From Haliotis cracherodii (taxonomy: Eukaryota): a stretch of 64,000 nucleotides of DNA. Shown in pieces: positions 2,967-62,590 of this stretch (its first letter is position 1; the number at the start of each line of letters is the position of its first letter). The notes below the pieces were generated by a model. It made no database searches, was not told where the DNA came from, and saw only the letters and a program-made list of their open reading frames with translations. Position numbers and translations under genes: made by a program. The stretch covers positions 70,060,001-70,124,000 of the forward strand of contig NW_027266297.1 in assembly GCF_022045235.1 (NCBI RefSeq), written 5' to 3'.

Positions 2967-5900
2967 TCACAGTGAGAAGAGTTTGAGAAACTCTTCAGGG
3001 TTGAGAGGTGTGGATGCTGGAGGCTCTTCGCTGTAGCATGGGTGGCCCAGGGACTGAAACAGTGGAGCAGAATCACAAATAAGCCAATTAACCTGGCAAC
3101 CTGGACATTATCCTTGCCCAATTGTGATCAGGGGCGGAATAGGTTCCCAGCAACTAACACTTGTCCAGTGGAGAGTCACCATATGGGATGTTGATAGTGT
3201 GACATTTGTCCCCTTAAACTGGCTTCCACGGGAGATATGGCTTGGGTGAGATCAAGCAATATCTCCCAGGAGCATCACAATGCTTTGCAGACCATTGTGA
3301 CATCATCGGTTACCATGATGTCACAATGAATGATTTTGGATGATGCATAAATTCTCACCCTCGTGTCTTTTAATATCAACACTCTGCAAGCCTCAGTGTT
3401 TAAACTTTTATTGATTCATATATCAACAGACACCCTGGTGAGATTCTCCATGTCAGAAAGGGTGTCAAGTGTTGCTCTGGTCAGACTTGCATACCACAAT
3501 GAGATGAATGCTGAATGATTAATGGTGAATGATTAATGGTGAATGCAGTGTGATATAACATTCACTGACATCTTCATGTGTAAATTATTGGAACGAAAAC
3601 AAGAAGATGTTTATGTGTTAACCAAAAGCAGGACTGTGAAATAGCAATGTTCCTTGAGTAGTCTCCCTTGGCCTACCTTTGGGGCATTGATTACAGGACA
3701 TCTCCAGAAATATTCACAAAATTGCATTCATTACTAATTAGCTTTGAACTGTCCCCCCATATCATCGTAGTTTCAGTGTGTGAAACCCATATCTGGTGTC
3801 TCCCCTTAATCCCCCCATCGTGGGTACAGAGTGTGACACCCATACCTGGTGTCTCCCCTTAATCCCCCCATCGTGGGTACAGAGCGTGACACACATACCT
3901 GGTGTCTCCCCTTAATCCCCCCATCGTGGGTACAGTGTGTGACACCCATATCTGGTGTCTCCCCTTAATCCCCCCATCGTGGGTACAGTGTGTGACACCC
4001 ATACCTGGTGTCTCCCCTTAACCCCCCCATCGTGGGTACAGTGTGTGACACCCATACCTGGTGTCCCCCCTTAATTCCCCCATCGTGGGTACAGTGTGTG
4101 ACACCGATACCTGGTGTCTCCCCTTAATCCCCCCATCGTGGGTACAATGACACCATATCTCACCTGCCAGAAGATGTTGTTGCAGTGCACACACAAGGCC
4201 AACATGTCAGCGTAACTGTCCTTCTTCCCGAATCGCCTACAATGACATCAGCGATGACATTTACTTCAACATACACAACACATATATCTGTATTGGGCAG
4301 ATGTCAGCCATGACACATACACAACATGCAAATCTGACCATGTCGGAAATTAACAGTAAAAACTGTGCATCACACTGGATTGTTGTCCGAGCTCAAGCTG
4401 GCATACAGGGCTGTTAATAAATGCTGACACTCACTCACTCGGTCACTCAAGAACCTCGACGCTTGAAGATCCGGTGTATATAGGTCTTCAGCAACACATG
4501 CTTGCTGTAAAGGGCGACTAAAGGGATCGGGTTGTCAGGATCGCTGACTTGGTTGATGCATGTCATCGATCCCAATTGCATGGATCGATGCTCATGATAC
4601 TAATCACTGGATTAACAGGTCCAGACTCGATTATTTACAGACCGCTGTCATATAGCTGGAATAATGCGGTGTTAAACAACAAACAAACAAACAAATCAAG
4701 AACCCCACTCACTCACTCACTCACTCAAGCACCAGTTTCGCCTCGCCCTACAATGATACTACTAGCCTAAATATGCCGGCACTGCCTTTAGGCTAAAAAA
4801 AATAATAGTCTTGGGATTCAGGCACTGCCCGCATCATGATGATGATTTTGCTTCCGTTTTCAAGAAAAAAATAAAAATCCTAATACTTAAAAATAATGCG
4901 ATCCAACATAGAATGCAGTTACTTCCCTTTACATGCCCACAGCTTTACTGCACATCTCGTGTTATGGTCATGGCGGCAATAGGAGCTTGTATGCTTGTTT
5001 ATGTAGGGAGGCCCTTTCCCAGGTTGATAATACACAACTGTTTATTTGGTTACATACTAGTTTGAACAAGCAAAACAAAACCCTATATTTTATAAAAGTC
5101 AGGGCCTGAGAACCAATTCTTTTATTTTTTTAGAGCCTTACTTGCAATGTTTCCCTTAGTGGATTGTCGTAGTAGCTTATGCTTGCTGTAAGAGCTGACT
5201 TCAACAGACTGGGTGATTAGGCTCCGTGACTGGTCTGAGTGATCATACTCCGACTGTGTGGAAGGGTGCTCACAATATCAACCACTGGTATGTCTGGACT
5301 TATTTACAAGCTGTTCCGAAACAGCTTGAATATTGCTGACAGTGTTCATGGTGTTAAACAACAAATATTTGTTTGGAATCTTAAACTGGTTATTTAGCTG
5401 AAGTGCGGTATTGCAGCTCTAGAACATATCTTACTTGTAGCAGCGTCTGTAGATGTACTTCCAGTCGATGGTGGGCTGGTGGATGGCGACGGGCAGGAAG
5501 GTCACCAGCTGCTTGTCTGTGAAGTGGAAGAAGCAGAGTTGCTTCCAGAGCTGCGCTTCCTGCGACAACTCATAGACGGTTTGGCTGGTTTGGGAGGTGT
5601 GTAGAATGTCCTTGTGGTCTGCCAGACAGCTCAAGATGCCACGGATACAGTCCTCTGGCAGGTCCATCATCGTCAACTTCCCATCACACTCCCGCTGTGA
5701 AAACAAGTCAAACAATGTACAAATCCCCGCTTTGGAGGTAGACAAGTGTTACCAGTCAAACAATGTTGAACTCTCCTGCTGTGGAGGTAGACAAGTGTTA
5801 CCAGTCAAACAATGTTGAACTCTCCTGCTGTGGAGGTAGACAAGTGTCACAAGTCAAACAATGTTGAACTCTCCTGCTGTGGAGGTAGACAAGTGTCTAA

Positions 5901-8900: not shown

Positions 8901-11900
8901 CACAGCCCTGACATAACACTGGACATTCTCACACAGCCCTGGCATTACATTGGAACACAGCCCTGGCATTACACTGGAACACAGCCCTGGCATTACACTG
9001 GAACACAGCCCTGACATTACACTGGAACACAGCCCTGGCATTACACTGGAACACAGCCCCGACATTACACTGGAACACAGCCCTGGCATAACACTGGAAC
9101 ACAGTCCTGACATTACACTGGAACACAGCCCTGGCATTACACTGGAACACAGCCCTGGCATTACACTGGACATTCTCACACAACCCCCGGCATTACATGG
9201 GACATTCTCACACAACCCTGGCATTATATGGGACATTCTCACACAGCCCTAACATTATGCAGGACATTCTCACACAGCCCTGGCATTACATGGGACATTC
9301 TCACACAACCCTGGCATTACGCGGGACATTCTCACACAACCCTGGCATTACGCGGGACATTCTCACACAACCCTGGCATTACGCGGGACATTCTCACAGT
9401 CTGACTAGGGCATGCTGTTCTTTCAGTCCTTTACATTGAGGTTAATCCCAAATTCTGTGAAGCTAGTATAAGCTTTTGTTGCACTATTATTGGTGTAATT
9501 ACCAGATGCCTTCACGATGTTAATTATCACTGTTATTTGACATACCTTACACACATAGTTAAATCTGCGAATGTCCTTCACAGCTCCGGTCATGTCCAGG
9601 CGGATGAAGGCCTCACTGATGCTGGTGAGTTCCTTGCGCTGCAACAACGTTGTACAAGCTGTATCAGGACATTGTCAATCTAAATTCCAGAGGCGCCAGG
9701 GCATTGTCAGTCTGAGATTGAGAGGCCCCAGGACATTGTCAATATATAATACCAAAAATAGGCTTCACACATTGTATCCATGTCGGGAATCGAACCCGGA
9801 TCTTTTGCATGACGAGCAAACGCTATCACCACTAGGCTACCCGACCGCCCAAGAACAAGAAAGAGGTATACCTACCAGTCAACATATGCAACTGAATGTT
9901 CAAAGCTCAGTGATAATTCTGTCACTCAATACTTCTAGTTCTATCTGTCATACACAAGATCAGTGTTAATTCTGTCACTGAGTACTTCTAGCTCTATCTG
10001 TCATACAACTGAATGTTCAAAGCTCAGTGTTAATTCTGTCACTCAGTACTTCTACTGTCAACTCTCACACAGAAGATATCCAGTTGGTTGTCCTGAAACC
10101 TAGCTGTAGGATTGCTGTCACTGTAGTTCACCGTAAACTACAATCTGGACGTTAATCACCATAGGAACAACAGGAACTGTATTAAGTCAGAATCATTTGA
10201 CATGTTTTTTAAGTGTCTGGACCAATGTAAGATGTTTGTCTCACTTCTCCCCTACATCTGGGTAAGACCCGTGAAGATCCGGGGTAGAATAGGTCTTCAG
10301 CAACCCATGCTTGCCGTAAAAGGTGGCCATGCTTGTCGTAAGAGGTGACTAACAGGATCGGGTGGTCTGACTTGGTTGATGCATGACATCAATCCCAATT
10401 GCGTGGATCGATGCTCATGATATTAATCACTGGATTGTCAGGTCCAGACTCGATTATTTATAGACCGCCGTCATATAGCTGGAATATTGCCGAGTGTGGC
10501 GTTTAACAACAAACCAACCAAATCATCTGGGTAAACAGCTCACCTCCTTGGACGTCCCCCGGTGGTACTGTATAAAGGGCTGTCGCCGCTCCATCACGTC
10601 TCTCTGGCTGGTGTCCACCAAGGCAAGTCGGATCAACCTGACAACCAGGAATCACGCCATGAGATATCAGCTCTACAAGTATCTCCCTGCGTCCATGCAA
10701 CACTTTGTGGATAATTATCATTTCTGAAATCTTAATTCCATGGAAATGTGACACTTAGTAACTAAAGACCTCCACCAAAAGGCACTCATCAGTACTTGTT
10801 CAAATTTTGGAGATACCTGAATTCAAAATAAACATGGCAGAAACTGCAAGATCAAATTTTCATCTCCTAAACATTATGTTCTTTATATCAGAAATCCATT
10901 TGCCTTTCACCTGAAGAGAGAAACATATTCCCCTACATTGCTACTGGATAAAAATAGAATAATTAACATTGTTCTGGTCGCTCTGTGGCTGAAATAATGC
11001 TGGTGTGACGGTAAATTTTAACTCACTCATAACTGACAACGGAAAAACTGACTATACAAGTGAGTGAGTGATTTATTATTTAACGTCACATCAGCAATAT
11101 TTAAGCCATATCGTGACAAGAAGTTATACATTAATAATACTTATACATAGACTAAATTAAAACCTATTGTCGATGGGCAGTACAATAACTAGAATATCAA
11201 AGATTCAAAACTAGTAGAGAACATTTAAAAGGAGAGAGTATTAGTTAACTCGAATGATATGGAACTTACATACCCTCTTAGGGGGCGACAATAATTTTAC
11301 GCTACTTCGAACTGTTTTCTTTTTAAGTCATCTGCTTGTTAAGGATAAACCACTGGGATAACAATCATTTAAAACATTCTAGGTGGACATGATGAAAACA
11401 CCTTGCACAAATATGCTCCTACCTATCGTGTGAGATGGTGACGCGCTCCGTGTGCCTCCCGACAATGTACAAGGTCTGAAAGTTTGATCATATATACACC
11501 TAAACGTGTCTGTCATCGCGAAGTAAAAATTTTCATTTGAATACATCCAAACATGGATTCGTCAGGTCCATATGCGCCTTTTAAGGGCATGCAAGAAAAC
11601 CCACTATCAGTTCGATAAAAGGGTGTCCTGGATTTACCACTGTCCCGCCAAGCAATATGCTATTTCTAGATATGACACATCAGGTAGCAATCATGGCTGC
11701 CGTTACTGTTGGAGTCACGGCCCGCTGCATATGGGGACAGCAATGGACAGTGTACCACGTGCTAATTACTTCTAATTGATTTGCATAAGACACATGAATG
11801 GACATGGTGATTGGCTGATGAGGTCTGATAAGATTTGAGCCGACCTGCGAGTGATTAGGCTTTTCGTTGATAACGAAAGTGGGCTGGTAGGAGAAGTCTC

Positions 11901-18984: not shown

Positions 18985-19915
18985 CATGTGTTATATCGTA
19001 TATCCGTACTGGTCTATGCTATGGTATATCATATATTCGTACTAGTCTATACGTGTGGTATATCGTATATCCGTACTGGTCTATACTGTGATCTATACCG
19101 TGGTGTATGATATATTCGTACTGTTCTATAGATATGATTTATCATATATTCGTACTGTTCTACACATGTGGTATATCATATATCCGTACTGTTCTATATC
19201 TGTGGTGTATCATATATTCGTACTGTTTTATATCTGTGGTGTATCATATATTCGTACTGTTCTATAGATGTGTTATGTCATATATTCGTACTGTTCTGCA
19301 CATGTGGTATATCATATATCCGTACTGTTCTATATCTGTGGTGTATCACATATTCGTACTGTTTTATATATATGATTTATCATATATTCGTACTGTTCTA
19401 TAGATGTGGTATGTCGTATATCCGTACTGTTCTATATCTGTGGTGTATCACATATTCGTACTGCTCTGTAGATGTGGTATGTCATATATTCGTAATGTTC
19501 TGCACATGTGGTATATCATATATCCGCACTGTTCTATATATTGTGGTGTATCATATATTCGTACTGTGCTGTAGATGTGATATATCTTATATTCGTACTG
19601 TTCTATAGATGTGATATATCATATATTCGTACTGTTCTATAGATGTGATATATCATATACTTGTACTGTTCTATAGATGTGATATATCATATACTTGTAC
19701 TGTTCTATAGATGTGATATATCACATATTCGTACTGCTCTATAGATGTGGTATGTCATATATCCGTATTGCTCTATATCTGTGGTGTATCATATATTCGT
19801 ACTGTTCTATAGATGTGATATAATCATATATTCGTACTGCTCTATAGATGTGGTATGTCATATATTCGTACTGTTCTGCACATGTGGTATATCATATATC
19901 CGTACTGTTCTACAC
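18985..19915. repeat. AT-rich ~34-bp minisatellite directly upstream of the SELENOP promoter
   Basis: Unit ATATCATATATTCGTACTGTTCTATAGATGTGAT. Confidence 0.95.
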
Positions 19916-19989
19916 TGGGGGTCAGAGACCGAGTAGATCCCGTGATAAGACCGGAAGGGGTTAAAGGGTAAGGTTCACGAGTCAGCAGA

Positions 19990-20083
19990 TAGCCTGCACA
20001 CATCAGCGCGCGTCACTCACCATCTCCTCAGTTTGTGTGAGCTCGTCCCGGGGAGACCACGGCACAAAGAACGCTCCACTAAG
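19990..20083 (+). promoter_or_regulatory. Putative core promoter and non-coding first exon of SELENOP
   Basis: Initiator-like TCAGTT at 20028-20033, a GC-richer unique stretch, and a strong donor AAG|GTAAGG at 20083/20084. The ATG-containing exon starts at an acceptor (22840), so an upstream exon is required. MRE core TGCACAC at 19995-20001. Confidence 0.55.
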
Positions 20084-22593
20084 GTAAGGATTGTCGTCTG
20101 GTAGGAACCAAACAGTTTGCAAAACAATTCATAGCGTACTAATATTCATCAGTAACTTGAACGATAGTTATTCGTTACGCATTCAACTTTTGCGGTTTCT
20201 GCGTTGACTCTAACGACGCAAATCAGGTCCCCTGAAGATGAGACCCATATTTTGCCCCTCAAAATAAGAATTTCAACCTGACAGTCTGATCATCCAGATC
20301 TGTCACACAGACCCTGAAACAAACATATCCAATACAGCCCATGCAAGTCTAATATAGTGGGCAAGCTAAGATTACTTCCGTTTGTGAAAATGAAGAGAGT
20401 CTCTGGCTCCTTTATTAAGATATTTTAACAACTGTAAAATATGATCATCTCAGAGACTAGGAGTTGGTCTGTGATCTTCCGTTCACTTTAAGATGCAGCG
20501 TTTTTCGTTATAGTGATGGATGTACAGATGCTTGTGTTTTATCCTGTACTGTCTCCCATACATAAATATATATCAGTCAATGTTGGGTGGCATCACGTGA
20601 CGAGCGTTAAACAAGATTGTTGACGGTCATGATGATCGTTGTATATTACACAACAGCCCAATGCATAATCAACAGCCACCAGTGCAAAACGCCCACAGTT
20701 TAGTAAACAAACTAGAAACTGATCCGGGAGCGCCATTAAAACGTTTGACCTCTTGAACTCCAACGACTGCTTGTAGAATGAATGACCTTGATCAGTCGTT
20801 GGAACGGGTCACGCTACGTGCACGTGAACTTAATCCACCAGATACACAACAATAGACGCTATCTCGCGGACAGCTCATACACAACAATCTTTAGTAATGG
20901 CCGACAGTTTTATCTGGTATTAGATAACTCGAAGAACTTAACATATGATTTATTGAGCTCACCTGACCCAATCTTTTACGCATACTATTTGCGCGTTATA
21001 CTCTATATGCATGTATGGTTATTTGATAGAAAGATATGAGGCATATGTATAATCTGTACAATAACATATAATTTTGTCCGTTTTTTTATGTTGAGTAATT
21101 TTGATTATTTTGGCCCTGTTATGCATCCAATGAATACACGTCCATAGTATCTATATCCAGGTGAGCTACGGTCTCTAAGGTTCCATTATGCAACACATTT
21201 ATATCTCCATTCCATTGTAATACAACTAATAGTAGAGATTGTCTACACGAGCTCTATGTTAGCTCGCCTGTCCTGACGTTGTCTGGCATCATGACTGTAG
21301 AATATATACTTTTTTATGAAAACAAATCCAATCTAAATATATATACAAAAGTAAGTCAAGCCAGCTCTAGCAAGCTCTATTCCACGTCAGCTTCAGGAAA
21401 ATTATTTGTTTTAATTTTAGAAGAGAGCAATGTATCGTGCAATATAAATTTTCATAGACAATATTTTAGTCTAGTCCTTACGGTATATGTCGACAATCGT
21501 CGTGAAACTTTCGATGGATTCGGCTTGAAATCTCGTGTGGGTGTTTGTTACCATCAGGGAATTCAAGTTTGTTTGAGGCATCAAGCCTGCGGTATCAGTA
21601 TAGCAGCCAGAATCCTGAAACCTGGTGAACGCGGTGTTCACTATTTATAGTTCCCTATTAGTTCGAGGCATCGTGATTCAAAATCAAATATGTCTGCCAG
21701 CAGCCATATTTGAAAATATATCAACTCGCGCATCGTCCTCGGTAAACATATTCTTCCCTAAAACCACTCGGACCCAATGAACTGAACCTCCACATGCTTC
21801 CCACCAATGATGACACCCCAATTCTTTCAAGAGGTTAGAACTAGACTTTCAATATGGCTGTCATGGCAGCCATATTGAAATATCTGTTTATGGCCGCTAC
21901 TCATGAAGTTTTTGTCATAAAGTTTGCTATATGTGTCGATGGTAGTGGGAGCTCAACATATGTTTCGGTTGTATTTTTTTGTTCTTGCGATATTTTAAAT
22001 GTTTACCTTTATTTGACCAATGTAGTCTGAACTTATCTAAAAATGCAGTTCTTTGCACTGCAATGTAAACACGATGTCAGACACCACCGAATCAATGAAG
22101 TTGAAACTTCACAAACTTGTCCCACCATTGATGAAGCCCTTTACTCAAGAGGTTCGAATACAATTTTCAACGTGGCCGCTTTGTACAGCAGCCAAATTGA
22201 AAACCTATAGTTGTGGTCATTACTCGGCCATTTTTGTTCAACCTTTGCGTTTGAACCATACTCTTTAATTATCATAAAAGCACTTTTGAGCTCTGTAAAA
22301 CGTAGGTCCCCAGAACCACTGGATCAGTGACGCATCCCATGTTTGTCCCCACCAACTAACAGTTTCATCGCAATTTGTTAAAGTGTCCCGGATCCAATTT
22401 TCAAAAGACCTCCTTCTGATATGGGAATCATTGGGAGTTGAATGTGTGTACTCAATATTAATGCAGAAAATACTACCAATGATGACAACAGGAACCTTTG
22501 ACAGTTTAGATGATTGACAGCATGGCTAGATAATCCAAAGTGTAGCACTGCTTTTTTTTAATTCACCACATAAGCGTTTATGTGGATTTAAGT

Positions 22594-22787
22594 GTTTGTT
22601 TGTTTCTTAATTAACGCCGCACTCAGAATTATTCCAGCTTTATGGCGGAGGTCTGTAAATAATCAAGTCTGGACCAGACAATTCAGTGATTGATATCATG
22701 ATATCACGCAATGTGGGATACGATGACATGCATCAACCAAGTCAAAGTCGCTTTTACGGCAAGTATGGGTCGCTTGGATCTTCAGGG
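22594..22787 (-). mobile_element. SINE family A copy (internally deleted)
   Basis: Reverse-complement match with gaps, just upstream of the SELENOP exon 2 acceptor. Confidence 0.7.
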
Positions 22788-22848
22788 TAGTTATTATAAT
22801 GTGGATGATGATATTAATGACATTGTTGTTTGTCCTCAGGTTGTTCAC

Positions 22849-22880
22849 GCCACTATGCGGGGCCCGCGGGCTCTGCTGGC
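22849..22880 (+). promoter_or_regulatory. GC-rich stem-loop overlapping the SELENOP AUG (initiation stem-loop candidate)
   Basis: GCCA(22849-52)/TGGC(22877-80) and GCGGGGCC(22857-64)/GGCTCTGC(22869-76) pair around a CGCG loop, with the AUG (22855-57) in the bulge/stem. Confidence 0.55.
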
Positions 22881-25795
22881 TTTAGCGGTCCTCTGCGTCC
22901 TCGCCCCCTCTGTCCTGGGCGTCCGCTGCTCCCGACCCCCGTCGTGGTCGGTGGATGGCGTGCGCCCGATGGAACAGTTGCGCGGCAATGTGACGTTGGT
23001 GGCGCTGCTAAAGGCTAGCTGATCCTTCTGTAGAACCCAGGCCGCAAGGTGAGTGTTGCTGTGTTAAAGAAGCACTTCGAGTGGTAACAACACTACCAGT
23101 GATAAAATGTATCTTCATTTCTTGATGCCTGACGCCATCCCCGATTATCCAGAGCATTATATATCCATTCAGTTTTAATTCCCTGAACGCATTCTCTACC
23201 ATGGCTTTGTTTGGGAAGTGACGCAACCCCATCGCTGCTATTTTTAACCTGGCACAGAATGTTTGTTTGTTTGTTTGTTAAACGCCGCACTCAGCAATAT
23301 TCCAGCTATATGACGGCGGTCTGTAAATAATCGAGTCTGAGCCAGACAATCCTGTGACTGATGCCATGAGCATCGATCCACGCAACTGGGATACGATGAC
23401 ATGCATCAACCAAGTCAGCGAGCCTGACCACCCGATCCTGTTAGTCGCCCCTTACCACAAGCATAGTCGCCTTTTACGGAAAGCATGGGTTGTTGACATC
23501 CTATTCTTACCCGGATCTTCACGGGTATGGCACAGAATGTCTCTCGCTGCTCAGAGTAATTTGATTGGACGCTTTTGTTTGCGTCGTGATGTTCGAATCG
23601 ATCTGAGAACTGATGTTGGATCCAGGGTGTTTATCATCATAGAATGGCCTGAATCGTGATCGTTTGTGGAATCTTTTTTTTATGACTGTTAAACTACAAG
23701 TCTTCCTAGGATATATGCAATGAATAGAAATACAATAACCTCTCAGTTAATGTAAGAATATGACATATCCTTATTCACTCACTCACTCATTCCCCTTCAG
23801 TCTGGAAGTTCTCCGGGGTTTGTTTGCTGATCACAACATGCCCGACATCAACATGATCATCATCAACGCCTACGACAACGCCTCCCTCGCCCTGTACAAC
23901 GAATTCGCCAGTCTGGTCACCTTCCCCGTGTACCAGGACACCCCACAGCTTGGACTCTGGGAACGGGTCTACGGCGGCCACAAGGACGATTTCTTCATAT
24001 TTGACAGGTCGGGAACTTACTAACTTGGCAAACTGGCATTACAAATTAAAACCAGTAGTTCCTTCATGGAACGCTCATTCTTGCAGACTCGACAGCCTTC
24101 ATACCATGAGTGGATCCTTGGATCGACTCGAAAGTCGGGTAACTTCGTCTTGGGTTGTTGTGCCATTCATCAAGTGTTTATTATAGAAAGCGGGTCACAT
24201 TTGGGCTCGAGTCTAAAATAGAATATCAAACACTGTCTGAGATAATGGGTGCAGTATTCAGTAGCTAGACAACTATACGTCAGTTTTTATACAGTTTGAC
24301 AATTCTGTCCCCTGACCTTGAGGATTACCAGGGGAAGCCCCCTTCTGTTGTAGTAACTGGTCCCACTGACAATAACTTAATTCGGCATCGATTTTCCCCT
24401 TCTAGGTGTGGACAACAGACCTACCATATCCAGTTTCCGATGACCTACCTTCAGTACCACTACACCCAGAGTGCTCTCATTGCAACCTACCGGGACAGCC
24501 CTTGCTACTGTCGGCTCAACTCCCAGCACCATCAAGGTCATCAAGGTCAACGAGGTCAACGAGGTCAACGGGGTCGACAAGGTCACGGCCACGGCCACGG
24601 CCAGTCCTCCTCTCGTCATCATTCCAACTCCAATCATCAGATGCAGGGAGATGATCCTACAGTACAACGTGTGCCCTCCAGATCTCCCAGATGTCAAGAC
24701 CTTTTATGTAGGATTCTCAGAAGACTGAGACGTCAGAACAGGCTTAACCTGAACAGAAATAGCTATTCCCATCGCCACAGGCAGCACTGAGCCTGCCCCA
24801 ACTCCCCTTCCACGACCCTTGTACCTACTCATGATTGTCTGTGCTCCTCGCAGGAGTCGAGCCGCAGATGATCGTGTTACCAGCAGCTGACTGACCTCGG
24901 CGACAGTCGTCCTGTGGGCTGGAGGTGTTCCTGACATCGCCCATCTGCAGCTCTGAAGGACAGATGTCTCTGTCAGTCCTGCAGACATCAGTCACGCCAA
25001 TCCAAACCCTGACGTCTTGAGAACAGGTGACAGTGACGTCAGCAGAGTGATCTGTCACTGAAACGTTGTCAGTGACCGTCAGTCACAGAATCTAGGTGCA
25101 GCTGACCATCCTTTGGCGACTGTGAGTGCCGTTTTAGACATGACACTTGATCATGATCTTCAACGGTTGCCCGTCGCTGAAGCTGCCCTAGTGGCCCTGA
25201 GTGCTGACAGTGTCTCGAAGGGGGTCAGGACTGTCAGTGACCAAGGTCTGGATCTGCTTGACAGTGACCAGGTACAGGGTCCTCCTGACAGTGACAGCTT
25301 CAGACACCTGAGGGGTCATCCTCATCCTGACAGTGACCAACTGGGTTGGGGGGTACCTGACATTGACAACATAGCTCAGGACAAAATCCATCGTCTTGAC
25401 AATGACCTTCAGGTCTAGGGTCCCCTTGACAGTGACAAGGGCAGGTCGCTAGTGGTGCAGGTTCATTGTACCAGTGACAGGCACATGAGTCAGGTTCAGT
25501 TTCCTGACAGTGTCAGACTCAGCAACAGTCCTGAGACTGACCATCTGGACTGGCAGGTTCTTGACAATGACAAGGGCAGTCCAGTTCTTCTTCCATCTCC
25601 TGTTCCTGACCGTCTGGTTTAGAATCCTGACAGTGACAAGGTCACAACTCAGGTGTGTCCTCTCCATCCACCTGAGTGTGATCGGAGAGCGGCAGGTCCA
25701 CCTCCCGAGTCACGTGACAATGACCTCTCCGATGACTTCCCTCTCTGGGTGCTCCTTGACAGTGACCCATAGGAAGAGGCGCTGAATGACAGTAG
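22855..25795 (+). CDS. SELENOP: Selenoprotein P with 43 in-frame UGA (Sec) codons, ~596 aa
   Basis: Coding exons: 22855-23048 (signal peptide MRGPRALLALAVLCVLAPSVLG...VTLVALLKAS-U-SFC, UGA at 23020-23022 forming UxxC); 23801-24007 (...PVYQD...LWERVYGGHKDDFFIFDR); 24406-25795 (CGQQTYHIQFP...His/Gln/Gly-rich linker, then 42 in-frame TGA with no TAA/TAG until the TAG at 25793). Total 1791 nt = 597 codons. The motifs match the SelP N-terminal domain (VALLQASU, KDDFLIYDRCG). Two SECIS elements lie downstream. Confidence 0.96.
23263..23527 (-). mobile_element. SINE family A copy with 13-bp TSD
   Basis: Flanked by TGGCACAGAATGT (23250-62 and 23528-40). Confidence 0.9.
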
Positions 25796-25973
25796 TCTGT
25801 CACTAGCTTCCACTTGCCAACCCTATACTTCCTCCTCTAAATAATTGTTGATTCCAAACGATCCTATCCCTGAAATTGAAAGCAAATGTCACACATATAG
25901 AAGTTTGTTATCAACAGTTGTCCTGTATCTTTCTCCTCTACCACTATGAACTTCTTAGCTGTCCAGAAAGAGG

Positions 25974-26038
25974 CCAGTGTTAATGAAAGCATTAGGGATA
26001 AAACCTGGCGGTCTCCCAATGAAGGAAGTGAGAACTGG
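25974..26038 (+). promoter_or_regulatory. SECIS element 1 (type II) of SELENOP
   Basis: Helix I CCAGT(25974-78)/ACTGG(26034-38); core ATGAA(25983-87)/GGAA(26024-27); helix II CATT-A-GGGA/TCCCAATG; apical AAAA plus mini-stem ACC/GGT. Two mismatches sit next to the core. Confidence 0.72.
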
Positions 26039-26475
26039 GGTATCGCTGGACGTCTAAGGACAACATAAGGCAGAGATCATCCATGTTGCATTACCATCGA
26101 TCTTTGTATTCATCTTTCATCACAAGGTGGGGCACATTACAAAACACGTAAAACTTTCATCGGACGAGTGAATGGTAGTGAACATATATTTCTTGAAGTG
26201 TTTTTTTCTGCTTTGTCCTGTGCCTCTGTTTTGACATGATCTGATTTTTAATGTGTTTAAGTATTTGTGGGTGGTTTTATTCAAAGGATGTGAAATAAGT
26301 GTTGAACCTTACCCTTCAATGTCATCAAAAAATTGCATTCCAAATTCCAAATTCCAAAGATGACCAACTATCAAGTGTTGGTCTTAATCCTACTGGACCA
26401 TTTCAATGTTTTGTGTGAGGGACATATTTGGGTCAGGTTGCAACATTTGTGTTGTAGTATCGTCAACTAATGAAA

Positions 26476-26571
26476 CTGTAGCTATTGCCTCCCACCGAGA
26501 ATGAGAAGCCATTACAAAACTTGGAAAAGGGTACTGGTTTTGATCAACTGGTGAGAATGCAATAGATACAG
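26476..26571 (+). promoter_or_regulatory. SECIS element 2 (type II) of SELENOP
   Basis: Core ATGAG(26501-05)/TGAT(26541-44); helix II AAGCCATTAC/GTACTGGTTT (9 of 10 paired); apical AAAA plus mini-stem CTT-GGAA-AAG; helix I CACC/GGTG; basal extension CTGTA-G-CTATTGC/GCAATAG-A-TACAG. Confidence 0.9.
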
Positions 26572-26596
26572 ACTCGAGGTTTTGTGTGAGTTTATG

Positions 26597-26602
26597 AATA
26601 AA
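26597..26602 (+). terminator. Polyadenylation signal of SELENOP
   Basis: AATAAA 26 nt after SECIS2, followed by GU-rich GATGTTGTTT (26621-26630). Confidence 0.7.
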
Positions 26603-26644
26603 ACCATTTGTCCTTACTTTGATGTTGTTTATTCTGGTATTAGG

Positions 26645-26804
26645 GGCGGTCGGGTAGCCTAGTGGTTAAAGCGTTCGCTCGTCACGCCGAAGACCCGGGT
26701 TCGATTCCCAACATGGGTACAATGTGTGAAGCCCATTTCTGGCGTCCCCTGCCGTGAAATGGCTGGAATATTGCTAACAGTGGCATAAAACCAAACTCAC
26801 TCAC
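26645..26804 (+). mobile_element. tRNA-derived SINE family B with 15-bp TSD
   Basis: Head GGCGGTCGGGTAGCCTAGTGGTTAAAGCGTTCGCTCGTCACGCCGAAGACCCGGGTTCGATTCCC (A and B boxes, GTC anticodon-like), (ACTC)n tail, TSD TATTCTGGTATTAGG (26630-44 and 26805-19). Confidence 0.9.
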
Positions 26805-27188
26805 TATTCTGGTATTAGGAAGAGTTGGATAGTTCCAGGATCCATGTACCTCAAGTTGCTGAAGACAACCAGTAGCCAGTGAGATGTGAGTAGCCTCTTG
26901 TCAAGAGGTCAAGAGCCTCATTCCACAATGCGATCTTTGAGCTACAACTATTGTTAGCCTGTGTAGAGTCTGATAGTTGCAGCTATGATTGTTTTTGTGG
27001 AACAAGGGTGTGAGGGTTGTCTCCCCTGATTGTCCTTCTTTCCAAGTTTCTTTCATCACCATACTCATCTTTCGGTAACCTTGTATGAGATGGGTTTGTC
27101 CAGGAATGGCACGAGTTGATCATAAATGTTCCAAGTCTATGGCCGTAAGATGTCTCCTGGGTTTCCTTCTAACGTATTCGGGGGCACT

Positions 27189-27448
27189 GGTGGCCCAGAT
27201 GTCCAAGGCGCCGTGATTCGCTGTCACTTGGACTCGCCAGAAACCTATGATTGTGGGTTCGAATCCTGGTTTGCCCCGATTAGGTTTCTAGGTCTGTCAG
27301 CACCATACCTTTGCTCGTGGGTTTCACTGAAGTGGTAAACGTCTGAGACCAGCATCACTCTGCACTTTCCTCCCACATTAAGCTGACACGCTGTGATATA
27401 ACTCGAATACTGTTAAAAGCGGCAGTAAACCCAACTCACTCAATCACT
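27189..27448 (+). mobile_element. tRNA-derived SINE family C
   Basis: A-box-like GTGGCCCAGATGTCCAAGGCG, B-box GGTTCGAATCC, body TTTCCTCCCACATT, shared tail and (ACTC)n. Minus-strand copies at ~48780-48985 and ~57600-57790. Confidence 0.75.
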
Positions 27449-27477
27449 CTAACATATTCTGCCTCAGGCAAACATGA

Positions 27478-27665
27478 TTGTTGTTGTTTGTTTGTTGTTT
27501 AACACCGCACTCAGCAATATACCACGAAATTGGGATATGATTACATACCAAGTCAGTGAGTCTGACCACTTGATCCCGTTAGTTGCCTTTTACGACAAGC
27601 ATAGTCACCTTTTACGGCAAGCATGGGTTGCTGAAGACCTATTCTGCCCCGGATCTTCACGGGTC
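27478..27665 (-). mobile_element. SINE family A copy (internally deleted)
   Basis: Both ends match the family consensus. Confidence 0.75.
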
Positions 27666-29334
27666 CAACATGGGCTTAGCCACCTTGCAGAAGTTGAAGG
27701 AAGACAAGTGTCAAAGTGTATCTGTTCTTGTGTGAAACTGATCATTTGTACTTATTGTTCCTAGGAGAATTATTTCCATGGAACAGATTTTACAAGGAAT
27801 ATTTTCATGAGACATTTACACTGGCAATATTTGTTATGGATGGAGCTTATTTGGTGTGGAACTGATCACCGTTGACACAAGCATTACAAAAATGTTGTAC
27901 TCGTGAAGGTAAAAAACTTTATTCTTTGGTCAACATCAGGCAAATAGACTGTTGATATACCTTTAAAATGTCAGGATATTATTTGGCACATAATAATATT
28001 AAAATGTTGTGTGCTGTTTAAGCACTTCAAATTAGTGAACATTTTGCATGTGGTACTTTTAAAAACTTACAATAGGATAACAATATTATTAATATACCAT
28101 ATACTGGCAGATTCACCAGAAACATGCTGAACGTCATGCAATCATCATTACAGCTGAACAAATATTATGCAGTAGTAAATAGCACCATCATGAGAAAAAT
28201 ATGTGTATTATAACAAAAGTTATGCGGAAGACTTACAAACTACACAAACTTTTCTAAATATTTTGAATAAACTTCAAATGGAACTGAGTAAGGTTCGATG
28301 TGCTCCAGTTCTACCTATACAGTTCACAATCAGACAAAAAACAGACAACAGGGTCAAAATCATCTAAAAGACCAAAAATTGGCACATAGAGTTAAGATAC
28401 TGGGCAGTGAATGGACGGAAAAAGCAAACATGGACATAGCACCAAACGTCGATTGTGACCAGAGTAACACTGCTGCTACTATCAACTGGACAGAATATAT
28501 ACCTAAGAGATATTACAGAGCAAGTATTTGAGATTGGTATCTCTTCATGAGAACAACAACTGTTGTGAACAATGGGCTTTTCATTAGAAAGGCTTAGTCT
28601 TTTATCTAATATTGTTTGCATAAAACATTTGGTGAGGCTTCAGCAGAGATATTTATAACATTTAACCATGGTAACAACAGAATATGGTCATATAAACTAC
28701 ATCGCGATCATCATTTGATTGACTGCAAGCACAAAACATAAAACTCAATGAGTCCCTCCACTGTAGAGAAGACGTAATGATAATACATACTTACGAACAA
28801 GATCCATGTCACATGGGAAACAACATGGCGCCCAAAGAAACAGTACATCATTGTATACTGAAATATCAGCTCTTGCAATAATATGTTCCCATTTTCCAAA
28901 TTCATCTGTATTGATCATTTCTTGGTTAAAAGATCTACACTGTAACTTATGCATCATGTTATGTATGAGTCATATGTTGAAGTTAAATGTTTCCCAGAAA
29001 AATACCATTTGGAATTCGAGATTGTCACCGACAGAAAAACATACTAAATGTTGAATTTTAACGCATGTGTCCAGGCAATTATGGAACAATTACAAGCTAA
29101 AGGCCAATCAGTAGTTATTTCATTATCTATTAAATCATTTAAAATAAACTGCTATCTGACATGTATATGACATTATTATGTCCTGCACCTGATTAGCATG
29201 GCCAAGAACTTTGCTGATTTTGACCTAATATTGCATATGACGTACATTGCAGTGGAATGAGCTGAGGCATCAAGACAATAGTACTCTGAAATTGTCTGGT
29301 GGCCCTGATTTTACACATTGATCTCTCGATCTTC

Positions 29335-46718: not shown

Positions 46719-49683
46719 TAATGTAATTTAACCATTCATGAGGGACATATAATCTGTAATTTCTCACAGTTCATTCTCTGAATAAGGTATCGTCAATCCC
46801 GATAACTGCCAAATGTATAGAACAGATATGATCACCATCTGAACCCACACGTCAGTGCGTGTCAAGCCACATATTTCCAAATCACCAACCCTGAGAAGAT
46901 CAGGGCGAGAACTGGTCTTCAGCAACCCATGCTTGTAGTATGAGGCGACTAATGAGGTCAGGTGATCAGGCGGTCAGGCTCGCTGACTTGATTGATGCAT
47001 GTCATCGTATCCCAATTGCGTGGATTGATGTCGGTAACTGGATTTACCAACTGCCGTCATATAGCTGGAATAATTCCGAATGCGATGTTGACAAAAGACC
47101 ACGCAACCAACCAGCAAAAGTCCACATTTTAAAATAAATTGTTACATCACTGTTACATGCCAAAGATAGACGTTATTTTGTTCATTTGTTGGTAAGCAAG
47201 TCCCAGCGGCCTTTTAGGATACCTACCTTGGGGCGGTGAGATAGTGTTACCACAGCTGGTATTATCATTATTATGATGATGTAGTTTCACAGTGATTGTT
47301 TTGTACATATTCGTTGTACTTCCCAGATGATATGTACATACTTATTGTTCAAATGTATATATTTTCCAGAATAAAATATTGACAATACCAATACAAATGT
47401 GCACAGTATTTTTTTTTTTTAATATATATACAGAACATTGTATCATGACATGAAAAACAAATGGTAGCTTTAACATACACAACACAGAAACACAAGAATA
47501 CGCAAATATATGTGGAGCTACAATGAGTGTGTGACTAGTTGCCATGGTTACTGCTCAGTCAATAGTGCTGTAAAATTATATGACCTAGATCATACGTAGT
47601 AAAATAGTAGTTATACATATCAAACTTTTTTCCCCGTTATATTTTTCGGTATGTTTTAACGTAATCACCGGAAAATATAAGAAAACTTGTGTACAGCTGA
47701 TTGCTATTTCCGGCTTTGTTTACAAAACAATACACACGGTAATCTTAACCCGTGCATTTTAAACCATGCCTAGAACCATCATGTTAAGTGATGCTTTAAT
47801 TGCAAATTTTCATTGACAAAGTTTGTTATAGCGTTGTTCATTCACCTGAAGTGATACAATGAAGTTGTTTTTTACCAACAAGATTTTGATGAAATTGTAA
47901 CCTTTACATAGGCCGACCCCTTCCTACAAAATATTTTCTCTTGTCCTCAAAATCTGGCTTATCTACGGTCATATATGGTATTGAGAATAACTGGAAGTAT
48001 CACTGCTTTATCCTAACTAGAGTCATCAACTTGACCTTTACCAAGTTCAACACTGCTTGACAGCTCTTGGTCAGTTCACATTCATCTTAGAGACTTAAGA
48101 CATGTGCTGATTGAATAACAGTATGCAAATGACAAAGAATCCACATTTATTTGTTTATTTATGAGTCAGGGTGAAATAACGGATGCTGTGATAAAAGCCA
48201 ATTACATTACAATTACAAAACCGAAATAACAGAAAATAGTGCCAAGGGTACTGTAGTTCACCTGGACATGGAGTGAACAGTTTTAAATGTCAACAAAGAT
48301 GCAGTTGAAGAAACTACAATGTCAACATGAGGAACATACATGCCACAGTTCAGCCTCTTGTCAGTTTCAGGAGAGAGGTTGACAGAGCCAATATATCATG
48401 CCTTTGACAGAATATAAGAGAATGGTCAAAATTTGGTCAATTTTTAAGACATTGCAAAAACATTGAACATGTCTGTTGAGCCCCACTACTAACTACACAC
48501 ACCAAATTTCATTCCATTTTGAGAAGAAAGGGCTGAGTAACAGACACAGAGGTGTCTGGATAGAGCTGGCCATATAGAACTTTGGATTCCAGCATGGTCA
48601 ACATGCAAAGTAAAAAATCAAAGTTCAGCATTTGTGTTGAGCCAACTACTAGTTACACAATTTACTTACATTCTGAACAGAAATGGCAGAGTAATGGCCA
48701 TATGTAGTTTCAGCTTTCAGTGTGGTTGAAGTGCAAAAGTCAAATCTACGTCATAATTTACAAAAAAGGAAACATATATGTCAGCTTAATGTGGGAGGAA
48801 AGCTTGAAGTGATGCAGGCCTCAGACGTTTACCACTTCGGTGAAACCCACAAGCACGGGTATGGTGCTGACAAACCTAGAAACATCATTGGGCCGAACCG
48901 GGATTCGAACCATTAATCATAGGTTTCTGGCGTGCCCAAGGGACACAACTCATAGCGAATTGTGGTGCCTTAGACGACTGGGCAATGGAGTTAACTGACT
49001 GTACATGTCCAGTTACCACCCTTGCAAAACTAGGCTGGGATTATGGAGTTATAGTTTGGCTGGACTAACGAGTCTATCCATAGTCCTATCAAAATCACCT
49101 AACAAAATTGACATCCGGATATAAACAACATGGATTTCAATATGCAGATTTCGGTTGACTGCAGGATTTGCAAAGCATGTGTACTGCCAACTGGGCGTTG
49201 ACATATATTTTCCAAATCTTGTCATGTTTTTAATCAAGTTTCTCAAATGATTTGATATACTTCGTGAGGTAAGACCCGTTTTGTGACAATATAGATCTTG
49301 ATTGATCGTTTTGTTTGGGTGCCGCCATTTTGTTAGAAGCAAATGCAAATGATAAGAGAAGTGGAATCTGACTGGTCAACAGGAGGGACATAGAAGGAAC
49401 ATAACTCGAAATAACCACTGGTGGTGCTACGATCAAGCACAGATCTTCCAGCATAGTTTGGCAAGGGTGGAAACTGGACTTTTAAAGTCAGTTAACTCTC
49501 TTGCCTCGCGAAGATGCAGGAAGATGACTGTGGTATATATTCAGCCAGGTTGATGCAGCATCAGTGCACATGTAAACACACAAAGTATGGCATACAGTGG
49601 CTGATTTTATCCTTGCAGGTGATACATAGTATATCAGCAAGTCCGTACTACACAGCGTTACTTTCCTACTCCCAAGACTTTAT

Positions 49684-61839: not shown

Positions 61840-62590
61840 TCTGTACGGGACTGGGCGTTGGAGGAGCTGTATATTGGACAAGGCGTTTGAGGAGCTGTAT
61901 ATGGGACAAGACGTTGGAGGAGCTGTATATGGGACAAGGCGTTGGAGGAACTGTATTTGGGACAAGACGTCAGATGGCGGTATGAGACAAGACGTCAGAG
62001 GGGCTGTATGAGACAAGACATTAAAGGGGCTGTATGGGACAACGGTAGAGGGGCTGTATGGGACAAGACGTCCGAGGGGCTGTATGGGACAAGACGTAAG
62101 AGGGGCTGTATGAGACAAGACGTCAGAGGGCTGTATGGGACAAGACGTCCGAGGGCTGTATGAGACAAGACGTCAGAGGGGCTGTATGGGACAAGACATT
62201 AAAGGGGCTGTTAAAGACGTCAGAGGGGCTGTATGGGACAACGGTAGAGGGGCTGTGTGGAACAAGACGTCAGAGGGCTGAATGGGACAAGACGTCAGAG
62301 GGGCTGTATGGGACAAGACGTCCGAGGGGCTGTATGGGACAAGACATCAAAGGGCTGTATGAGACAAGACGTCCGAGGGTTGTATGGGACAAGACGTCAG
62401 AGGGCTGTATGGGACAAGACTTCTGAGGGCTGAATGGGACAAGACGTCAGAGGGGCTGTATGAGACAAGACATCAGAGGGCTGTATGGGACAAGACGTCA
62501 GAGGGGCTGTATGGGACAAGACGTCAGAGGGGCTGTATGGGACAAGACGTCAGAGGGGCTGTATGGGACAAGACATCAAAGGGCTGTATT
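61840..62590. repeat. 26-27-bp minisatellite
   Basis: Unit GGGCTGTATGGGACAAGACGTCAGAGG. Confidence 0.95.

What the first reader, a model, noticed from the sequence alone, without database searches (positions are those of the whole stretch)
22855..25795. Hidden hyper-recoded selenoprotein: SELENOP with 43 in-frame UGA codons
Seen: the ORF track stops at the TGA at 23020 and the TGA at 24788. Reading on in the same frame from 24788 gives 336 codons containing 42 TGA and no TAA/TAG until the TAG at 25793, which is not credible by chance. The TGAs occupy Cys-like positions (UAC, CSU, CQU, UQC, UQU). With the UxxC UGA this makes 43 Sec in ~596 aa. Established: human SELENOP has 10 Sec, and very Sec-rich SELENOPs are described in bivalves (Pacific oyster 46, up to 132 in a freshwater mussel). 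The class is therefore known, but this protein would be truncated or missed by standard annotation. Inference: a high-capacity selenium storage/transport protein in a probable gastropod.
Basis: partly seen in the sequence, partly recalled or inferred. Interest (0 to 1): 0.95.

Follow-up and report, generated by a model that had tools for sequence, protein, structure and literature searches.

The report
Abalone selenoprotein P, 43 selenocysteines
This is a real black abalone gene for the selenium-carrying protein selenoprotein P; it reads 43 UGA "stop" codons as selenocysteine, public annotation cuts it to a 184-residue stub, and this kind of gene has been known in molluscs since 2019.

Summary
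The frame starting at 24788 has 336 codons with 42 in-frame TGA and no TAA or TAG before the TAG at 25793. Dinucleotide shuffles give 10.4±2.9 in-frame TGA.

A three-exon model (22855-23048, 23801-24007, 24406-25795) gives 596 codons with 43 TGA. All three exons match Pfam SelP_N in order, and the first TGA sits at the UxxC site. The 23 [U/C]-x-[U/C] dyads use only TGA, TGT or TGC at their anchor codons. The 3'UTR has two SECIS-like hairpins and one AATAAA.

The genome has tRNA-Sec genes, a SepSecS gene and only this one SELENOP gene. The window is Haliotis cracherodii: RefSeq XP_071117120.1 ("selenoprotein Pb-like", 184 aa) is 100% identical to residues 78-261, so it is cut at both UGAs.

The tail aligns collinearly with oyster-type SELENOPs that public catalogues store with UGA read as Trp. 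Conservation of individual Sec sites did not beat permutation controls.

Verdict: a genuine multi-Sec SELENOP, a new member of a known kind (oyster 46, bivalve 132, lamprey 162 UGAs). The scan's earlier notes cover this same stretch only, not other DNA.

The parts
19990..20083 (+). Candidate non-coding 5' leader exon (unverified)
Evidence: A GT donor (AAG|GTAAGG) sits at 20084 and the stretch contains no ATG. Exon 1 has an acceptor at 22839, which implies an upstream exon.
22840..23048 (+). First coding exon: ATG at 22855, signal-peptide-like N-terminus, start of the SelP_N domain
   Evidence: Acceptor CCTCAG| at 22839 and donor AAG|GTGAGT at 23049. Pfam SelP_N E 3.4e-8, profile 4-36. The hydrophobic run LLALAVLCVLAPSVLG is read directly from the translation.
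23020..23022 (+). UGA1: the Sec codon of the U-S-F-C (UxxC) redox motif
   Evidence: It is in frame with the ATG (55 codons downstream) and lies in the gap between profile positions 36 and 47 of SelP_N. Oyster-type homologues carry W (UGA read as Trp) followed by xxC at the same column.
23801..24007 (+). Second coding exon (SelP_N core)
   Evidence: Pfam SelP_N E 4.6e-7, profile 47-117. 100% identical to RefSeq P0004 residues 1-57. Splice sites shown.
24406..24787 (+). Last exon, first part: end of SelP_N, a His/Gln/Gly-rich stretch (tandem 9-nt and 6-nt units at 24533-24603), and a basic segment at 24683-24787 that is almost invariant among four Haliotis species
   Evidence: Pfam SelP_N profile 118-206. 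127/127 identity to P0004, which confirms the 24007|24406 junction. TRF rows. Alignment A2.
24788..25792 (+). Sec-rich C-terminal tail: 335 codons with 42 UGA and 18 Cys, built of diverged [U/C]-x-[U/C] modules, mostly S-U-Q-U-P/Q
   Evidence: No tandem array was found. Modules are 63-81% identical; in 12 of the 14 repeat families every spacing is a multiple of 3. GC is 0.52-0.55 here and drops to 0.36-0.44 after the stop. BLASTP of the tail alone against oyster-type SELENOP gives E 1e-10.
25793..25795 (+). TAG terminator
   Evidence: It is the only TAA/TAG in the frame. Ordinary stop density resumes after it: TAA 25838, TGA 25871, TGA 25877, TAG 25898.
25945..26067 (+). SECIS-like element 1 (core 25969-26041; ATGA at 25983, GA at 26025, unpaired AAA, mini-stem; long basal helix)
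   Evidence: Constrained folding and my own filter; MFE fold. It is less canonical than element 2: three purine-purine layers lie between the quartet and helix II. Rfam SECIS_1 does not report it.
26465..26581 (+). SECIS-like element 2 (core 26487-26558; AUGA at 26501 opposite UGAU at 26541-26544, an 11-layer helix II, AAAA internal loop, mini-stem; form 2)
   Evidence: It has the canonical U.U / G.A / A.G quartet. Rfam SECIS_1 does not report it.
26597..26602 (+). AATAAA polyadenylation signal
   Evidence: It is the only A[AT]TAAA between 25796 and 26750.

Best explanation
The locus is the single SELENOP gene of the black abalone, Haliotis cracherodii. It encodes a secreted protein of 596 residues. 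The N-terminal part is a thioredoxin-like SelP_N domain with a U-S-F-C redox site. A His/Gln/Gly-rich and strongly basic linker follows. The last 335 residues form a tail holding 42 more selenocysteines, mostly in U-Q-U dyads.

All 43 UGA codons are inferred to be recoded to Sec by the eukaryotic SECIS pathway, using two SECIS hairpins in the 3'UTR, tRNA-Sec, SECISBP2 and eEFSec. By analogy with oyster and vertebrate SELENOP, decoding would be inefficient at UGA1 and processive through the tail.

Three features of the sequence fit that mechanism. All 42 tail UGAs lie in the last exon, so termination there would not trigger NMD. Of those 42, 34 are followed by C, the weakest termination context. 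Cys dominates the start of the tail and Sec the end.

The protein most likely stores and transports selenium in haemolymph, carrying 43 Se atoms per molecule, with a redox function in its N-terminal domain.

Shown here: the sequence features, the family membership and the presence of the Sec machinery genes. Inferred: translation through the tail, secretion and transport.
For: Frame statistics: 42 in-frame TGA against 10.4 +/- 2.9 in shuffles.

Family membership: SelP_N matches on all three exons, with UGA1 at the UxxC gap.

Sec/Cys exchange: the anchor codons of 23 dyads are only TGA, TGT or TGC. In-frame TGG occurs once and TAA never, although both are one step from TGA.

Frame maintenance: the tail modules are old (63-81% identity) and, in 12 of the 14 repeat families, spaced only in multiples of 3.

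Composition: coding-like GC extends to 25795 and then drops.

SECIS: my SECIS-like filter gave six hits in the 128 kb of both strands, and two of them lie in the 830-nt 3'UTR on the correct strand.

Sec machinery: at least five tRNA-Sec genes, with the TCA anticodon confirmed for four, and a SepSecS gene.

Single copy: the gene and the SelP_N domain each occur once in the genome.

Splice junction: the RefSeq model is 100% identical and uses the same exon 2/3 junction.

Homology of the tail: with UGA read as W, the protein aligns end to end with oyster-type SELENOPs that are stored the same way (E 6e-54 overall, 1e-10 for the tail alone). The global tail score lies 3-5 sd above segment-permuted controls.

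Context bias: C follows UGA in 34 of 42 tail codons against 65 of 251 elsewhere, Fisher p 1e-11.

Literature: 46 Sec in oyster and 132 in a bivalve (PMC8230778); 162 in lamprey SELENOP2 (PMC13134290).
Against: Rfam SECIS_1 reports neither hairpin, even at E <= 10. That model also gives only 19.5 bits, below its cut-off of 35, to the likely SECIS of this genome's SELENOF gene, so the negative result is weak.

SECIS element 1 is not fully canonical.

Absence of TAA/TAG alone is only P = 0.074.

Conservation of individual Sec sites against oysters is no better than permuted or reversed controls.
Confidence: 0.93

Rival explanations
1. The gene makes only a single-Sec, SELENOPb-like protein that ends at the UGA at 24788. 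The TGA-rich stretch would then be untranslated 3'UTR, a relic of a former Sec tail.
For: RefSeq names it 'selenoprotein Pb-like' and ends the protein at this UGA in four Haliotis species. There is no translation evidence here. Absence of TAA/TAG alone is only P = 0.074.
Against: A relic would lose its frame. Here the diverged modules keep spacings in multiples of 3 in 12 of 14 repeat families. The 42 TGAs stay in one frame. Their one-step neighbours TAA (0) and TGG (1) are nearly absent, while TGT/TGC take their place in paralogous dyads. Coding-like GC persists to the TAG. The tail is homologous to oyster tails. The RefSeq model also drops the UxxC exon, so its ends reflect a pipeline that cannot read UGA rather than biology.
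Confidence: 0.04
2. The pattern is a by-product of a minisatellite or low-complexity repeat whose unit contains TGACAGTGAC and has a length divisible by 3. It would not be coding sequence.
For: The motif TGACAGTGAC recurs and the tail is modular.
Against: Tandem Repeats Finder finds no array in 24788-25795, even at score 30. Copies are only 63-81% identical and irregularly spaced by 27 to 258 nt or more. The region continues an SelP_N open reading frame in phase. It aligns with oyster SELENOP tails.
Confidence: 0.01
3. The full-length protein is a minor product. Most ribosomes would terminate at UGA1 or early tail UGAs, so the main products are truncated isoforms and the Sec load varies with selenium supply.
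For: From memory of Baclaocos et al. 2019 (not held here): about 5% efficiency at UGA1 in oyster. Shortened isoforms of mammalian SELENOP are established knowledge. The Cys-rich start and Sec-rich end of the tail would fit graded products.
Against: This refines the main reading rather than replacing it. Nothing in the sequence measures efficiency. The UGA-C bias and placement of the tail in the last exon argue for efficient read-through once decoding has started.
Confidence: 0.3

Closest known systems
Pacific oyster (Magallana gigas) SELENOP, 46 UGA (Baclaocos et al. 2019, J Mol Biol 431:4381; cited through PMC8230778, because the paper itself is not held)
   Same: Signal peptide, SelP_N domain with UxxC, basic linker, and a tail of about 330-370 residues built of [U/C]-x-[U/C] dyads, many of them UQU. 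The Sec load is nearly the same (43 against 46). There are two SECIS elements in the 3'UTR. Oyster-type database proteins P0010, P0034 and P0038 align end to end (E 6e-54).
   Different: Gastropod rather than bivalve. Overall identity is about 28%. Abalone has a Q/G/H-rich repeat and a basic segment that the oysters lack, lacks two internal tail blocks, and has a longer C-terminal end. Nothing experimental exists for abalone. The oyster leader ORF and initiation-site RNA structure (recalled from the abstract) were not found convincingly: the fold around the AUG has z = -1.5.
Human/vertebrate SELENOP (SELENOP1), 10 Sec
   Same: Same domain order, UxxC, a His-rich region, and two SECIS elements. 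UGA1 lies in an early exon and all tail UGAs lie in the last exon (the vertebrate layout is from memory).
   Different: Four times more Sec. The tail modules are UQU dyads rather than the vertebrate pattern. Both abalone SECIS look like form 2. Pfam SelP_C could not be tested.
Vertebrate SELENOP2/SELENOPb (single Sec), the name RefSeq gives this gene
   Same: N-terminal SelP_N domain with one redox Sec.
   Different: [quoted passage not shown] Invertebrate genes fall outside both vertebrate clades, so 'Pb-like' is a misnomer caused by the truncation.
Lamprey SELENOP2 with 139-162 UGA (PMC13134290) and the freshwater mussel SELENOP with 132
   Same: Extreme multi-Sec tails that automated annotation misses.
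   Different: They carry three to four times more Sec than abalone, so abalone sets no record.

Membership tests
SELENOP (selenoprotein P) | N-terminal SelP_N domain (Pfam PF04592) | tested here: met
   All three exons score above the 23.2-bit cut-off (33.6, 29.9 and 24.8 bits) at consecutive profile positions 4-36, 47-117 and 118-206. The whole-genome search finds only these three exons.
SELENOP (selenoprotein P) | Sec in a UxxC redox motif at the conserved position of the N-terminal domain | tested here: met
   The TGA at 23020 is followed by S-F-C and lies exactly in the gap between profile positions 36 and 47. It aligns with W-x-x-C (UGA read as W) in two of the three oyster-type homologues, P0010 and P0038; P0034 has W at that column but no Cys three residues later.
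SELENOP (selenoprotein P) | C-terminal domain with multiple in-frame UGA (Sec) interchangeable with Cys | tested here: met
   42 in-frame TGA. The 23 dyads have anchor codons of TGA, TGT or TGC only. Tail-only BLASTP to oyster-type SELENOP gives E 1e-10. Pfam SelP_C was not tested, because the pieces between stops are 26 aa or shorter.
SELENOP (selenoprotein P) | Secretory signal peptide | tested here: inconclusive
   The N-terminus MRGPRALLALAVLCVLAPSVLG has the n/h/c layout of a signal peptide and aligns with the same feature in oyster-type proteins. No signal-peptide predictor was available.
SELENOP (selenoprotein P) | His-rich / basic linker between the two domains | tested here: met
   The HHQGHQG...GHGHGHG...RHH run and the RILRRLRRQNR segment.
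Eukaryotic selenoprotein gene (SECIS-dependent UGA recoding) | SECIS element(s) in the 3'UTR with an AUGA...AA...GA core on a two-helix hairpin (two in multi-Sec SELENOP) | tested here: inconclusive
   Two hairpins pass my own pattern-and-fold filter, out of six hits in the 128 kb of both strands. Element 2 is canonical. Element 1 has three extra non-Watson-Crick layers. Rfam SECIS_1 is silent at E <= 10, but it scores the likely SELENOF SECIS of this genome at only 19.5 bits. My filter missed that control, so its sensitivity is imperfect. SECISearch3 was not available.
Eukaryotic selenoprotein gene (SECIS-dependent UGA recoding) | Sec machinery present in the same genome | tested here: met
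   At least five tRNA-Sec matches above the Rfam cut-off, four confirmed with a TCA anticodon by ARAGORN. A seven-exon SepSecS gene. A SELENOF exon with a weak SECIS_1 match downstream.
Eukaryotic selenoprotein gene (SECIS-dependent UGA recoding) | Transcript contains the UGA-rich region, and ribosomes or protein extend through it | not testable with these tools

The most novel reading that the evidence does not exclude
Abalone (43 Sec) and oysters (46 Sec) carry almost the same selenium load on collinear tails made of the same [U/C]-x-[U/C] dyads. A tail of about 40 Sec, and the processive recoding it needs, may therefore date from the common ancestor of gastropods and bivalves rather than being a bivalve speciality. 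An amplified tRNA-Sec gene cluster in abalone could support it.
Probability: 0.3. Interest if true: 0.5.

Novelty: new member of a known kind. Interest (0 to 1): 0.35.

Why it matters
The gene is real and badly annotated. RefSeq lists 184 of its 596 residues and none of its 43 selenocysteines. The same truncated "selenoprotein Pb-like" entry recurs in three other abalone species, in Gigantopelta, in Dreissena and in Saccostrea. Studies of selenium in abalone that rely on the public gene models will miss what is probably the animal's main selenium carrier. That covers nutrition in aquaculture, stress and disease work, and the endangered black abalone. The finding also adds a gastropod data point to the evolution of Sec-rich SELENOP tails. 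It does not reveal a new mechanism: multi-Sec SELENOPs with 46 to 162 UGAs are published, and Selenoprofiles is designed to find them.

Tried and rejected
**Rfam.** cmscan on 19000-28000 at E <= 1 and on 25700-26700 at E <= 10 found no SECIS family. I treat this as weak evidence, because SECIS_1 gives only 19.5 bits to the likely SELENOF SECIS of this genome.

**My own SECIS filters.** The first two were too strict and found only element 2. The relaxed one finds both elements but misses the SELENOF control.

**Literature.** Baclaocos et al. 2019 is not held, by DOI or by PMC id, and neither is PMC7409585. Whether Haliotis was in their data set is unknown. What I say about that paper beyond "46" and "132" comes from memory.

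**Per-site Sec conservation against oysters.** MAFFT puts 30-32 of the 43 U columns on W. In pairwise global alignments of the tail alone, 33-34 of the 42 tail U positions fall on W, against 23 +/- 3 for residue shuffles, 28 +/- 3 (maximum 34-37) for segment permutations and 30-32 for the reversed sequence. I therefore reject the site-by-site claim. Only the collinear homology of the tail as a whole holds.

**Synonymous-site test on module flanks.** The modules are too diverged to be informative: entropy at the three codon positions is 1.73, 1.72 and 1.86.

**RNA structure at the start codon.** z = -1.5, not significant.

**Other searches.** Pfam Rdx (SelT/W/H) gave no match in the six-frame genome search. 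A second word-index protein search with the RefSeq protein returned only Haliotis.

**What was not sent to tools.** The joined, spliced and read-through protein was never sent to any search tool. Exons and inter-stop pieces were searched by reference. Joining, and reading UGA as W, was done only inside scripts, for counting and for local alignment to database proteins.
Full report
**Observation.** An ATG at 22855 opens a frame that meets a TGA at 23020. From the TGA at 24788 the same phase runs for 336 codons with 42 TGA, no TAA, and a single TAG at 25793. Of the 55 TGA triplets in that segment, 42 are in this frame, and the other five frames carry ordinary mixtures of stops. Dinucleotide-preserving shuffles give 10.4 +/- 2.9 in-frame TGA, with a maximum of 23 in 20,000, so the enrichment is far beyond chance.

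**Gene model.** Canonical splice sites join 22855-23048, 23801-24007 and 24406-25795 into 1791 nt: 596 sense codons, 43 of them TGA, followed by the TAG. Searched one by one by reference, the three exons match Pfam SelP_N above its cut-off at consecutive profile positions 4-36, 47-117 and 118-206. The ten missing positions are exactly the residues U-S-F-C-R-T-Q-A-A-S, so the first TGA is the Sec of the family's UxxC motif.

The N-terminus reads as a signal peptide. A His/Gln/Gly-rich repeat (24533-24603) and a strongly basic segment come before the tail.

GC stays at 0.52-0.55 through the tail and falls to 0.36-0.44 right after the TAG. Ordinary stop density returns there. One AATAAA lies at 26597. 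An acceptor at 22839 implies a 5' leader exon.

**Signs that the TGAs are Sec codons.**
- The tail is not a tandem array. It consists of old modules, 63-81% identical; in 12 of the 14 repeat families every spacing is a multiple of three.
- Aligning the 23 [U/C]-x-[U/C] dyads in frame shows that both anchor codons are only ever TGA, TGT or TGC. Examples are TGT-CAG-TGA at 25067 and 25232, and TGA-CAG-TGT at 25205 and 25505.
- In the whole tail, TGG occurs once and TAA never, although both are one mutation from TGA. This is the classical Sec/Cys exchange signature, seen here between paralogous modules.
- C follows the UGA in 34 of 42 tail codons, against 65 of 251 other codons (Fisher p 1e-11). 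UGA-C is the weakest eukaryotic termination context (established knowledge).
- Cys is concentrated at the start of the tail and Sec at the end. By fifths, Sec counts are 3, 8, 10, 10, 11 and Cys counts are 8, 5, 3, 1, 1.
- All 42 tail UGAs lie in the last exon, so failed decoding there would not expose the mRNA to NMD (inference).

**SECIS elements and machinery.** Rfam's SECIS_1 model reports nothing in the 3'UTR, even at E <= 10. A pattern-and-fold filter of my own required ATGA, GA, at least 9 pairs in helix II, at least 4 pairs in helix I, and unpaired AA 9-15 nt from the quartet. It gives six hits in the 128 kb of both strands of the window. Two of them lie in the 830-nt 3'UTR on the coding strand.
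- Element 2 (core 26487-26558) is canonical: AUGA opposite UGAU, an 11-layer helix II, an AAAA internal loop and a mini-stem.
- Element 1 (core 25969-26041) has the AUGA/GGAA quartet but three extra purine-purine layers before helix II.
- Both sit on long basal helices, 25945-26067 and 26465-26581.
- As a control I located a SELENOF exon elsewhere in the genome. Rfam gives its downstream SECIS only 19.5 bits against a cut-off of 35, so Rfam is insensitive in this species. My filter missed that element, so it is imperfect too.
- I rate the SECIS criterion as probably met but not proven.
- The genome has at least five tRNA-Sec genes above the Rfam cut-off: one on contig 2 and a cluster of four within 5 kb on contig 1. 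Four were confirmed with a TCA anticodon. It also has a seven-exon SepSecS gene.

**Organism and annotation.** The first part of exon 3 finds only "selenoprotein Pb-like" proteins of Haliotis. The cluster of the H. rufescens entry also holds XP_071117120.1 of Haliotis cracherodii (184 aa, on a 73.4-Mb contig). That protein is 100% identical to the window from Met78 in exon 2 to His261, the codon before the TGA at 24788. The window lies at 70.06-70.12 Mb of contig 34 of a 1.18-Gb assembly.

So the window is black abalone, and RefSeq's model uses my exon 2/3 junction. The public protein starts after UGA1 and stops at UGA2: 184 of 596 residues and none of the 43 Sec. The entries for H. rufescens, H. 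asinina and H. rubra end at the same ...HRQH. The gene and the SelP_N domain occur once in the genome.

**Relatives with a tail.** I ran a profile of the four truncated Haliotis proteins against 1.84 billion representatives. It found 247 homologues. Several are 590-623 residues long with 49-52 Trp (P0010, P0034, P0038), and one is 804 residues long with 77 Trp (P0124). They carry W at the UxxC position, so they are SELENOPs whose ORFs were called with UGA read as Trp, from 2-3 kb Logan/ENA contigs. The cluster of P0038 includes the truncated RefSeq entry of the oyster Saccostrea cucullata.

Inside a script only, I read the abalone UGAs as W. The abalone protein then aligns end to end with these (E 6e-54, residues 1-531 against 1-578). 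The tail alone gives E 1e-10 with composition correction.

MAFFT places 30-32 of the 43 abalone Sec columns on W and 4-7 on C. I do not rely on that. In pairwise global alignments of the tail alone, 33-34 of the 42 tail Sec positions fall on W, while residue shuffles give 23 +/- 3, segment permutations 28 +/- 3 (maximum 34-37), and the reversed sequence 30-32. What survives is collinear homology of the whole tail: the global score for P0038 is 368 against 242 +/- 25 for permuted controls, and z is 3-5 across the three proteins. The dyad architecture is also shared.

**What is known.** Held papers state 46 Sec for oyster SELENOP and 132 for a bivalve (PMC8230778), and 139-162 UGAs for lamprey SELENOP2. 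They also state that invertebrate SELENOPs fall outside the vertebrate P1/P2 clades (PMC13134290). The primary paper, Baclaocos et al. 2019, is not held. From memory of its abstract, oyster SELENOP is translated full length, with about 5% efficiency at UGA1 and near-complete efficiency at distal UGAs, and it uses two SECIS elements. No held paper describes an abalone SELENOP.

**Limits.** The joined or read-through protein was not sent to any search tool; exons and pieces were searched by reference.

**Verdict.** This is a genuine, single-copy, 43-Sec SELENOP of Haliotis cracherodii, truncated in RefSeq (confidence about 0.93). It is a new member of a known kind. It is useful as an annotation correction and as a gastropod data point, but it is not a new mechanism.

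Noticed in passing
G000:C1:75962886-75967983 and G000:C2:13918776-13918861 (L002-L004): tRNA-Sec is multi-copy: a cluster of four genes within 5 kb, plus one on another contig. The contig 1 and contig 2 versions differ by a compensatory pair in the variable arm. One cluster copy starts AAA instead of GCC, which breaks the acceptor stem, so it is probably a pseudogene. This could relate to the demand created by a 43-Sec mRNA.
   Followed up: partly
window 24683-24787: The basic segment just before UGA2 (S-R-C-Q-D-L-L-C-R-I-L-R-R-L-R-R-Q-N-R-L-N...H-R-Q-H) is almost invariant in four Haliotis species, while the rest of the protein is 62-70% identical between the distant ones. It is absent from the oyster-type proteins. 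It could be a protein site (heparin or receptor binding, or cleavage) or an RNA element ahead of the Sec tail.
   Followed up: no
proteins P0010, P0034, P0038, P0124: Public ORF catalogues (Logan/ENA) hold full-length multi-Sec SELENOPs translated with UGA as Trp. These 'Trp-rich' entries could be mined for Sec-rich proteins. P0124 (804 aa, 77 W, ANWQ/SWQ repeats) comes from an unnamed ENA contig and may carry about 70 Sec. Its taxon is unknown.
   Followed up: partly
RefSeq proteins P0005/P0154 (Gigantopelta aegis, 148 aa, two copies), P0007 (Dreissena polymorpha, 273 aa), P0169 (Saccostrea cucullata, 168 aa): The same truncated 'selenoprotein Pb-like' annotation recurs in other molluscs. This suggests a systematic annotation error for mollusc SELENOP.
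   Followed up: no
window 26648-26719; also 22700-22790 and 23270-23530: A tRNA-like sequence (Rfam tRNA 24 bits, below cut-off) starts about 45 nt after the poly(A) signal. Related repeat copies sharing 'gggatacgatgacatgcatcaaccaagtca...' lie upstream of exon 1 and in intron 1. They are probably a tRNA-derived SINE family.
   Followed up: no
window 61994-62090 (+), 5263-5363 (-), 10657-10735 (-), 46943-47019 (-): These are the other four hits of my SECIS-like filter in the window. I did not check whether any lies in the 3'UTR of a gene, so they may be chance matches.
   Followed up: no
L009 4295-4471 and 5268-5326 (G000:C5:6436000-6445999): A SELENOF (Sep15) exon with a weak Rfam SECIS_1 match (19.5 bits) about 800 nt downstream. 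I used it only as a sensitivity control.
   Followed up: partly
window 19643-19900: An AT-rich tandem repeat (units like ATGTGATATATCATATA...GTACTGTTCTATAGATG) lies just upstream of the candidate leader exon. It produces spurious weak miRNA matches in Rfam.
   Followed up: no
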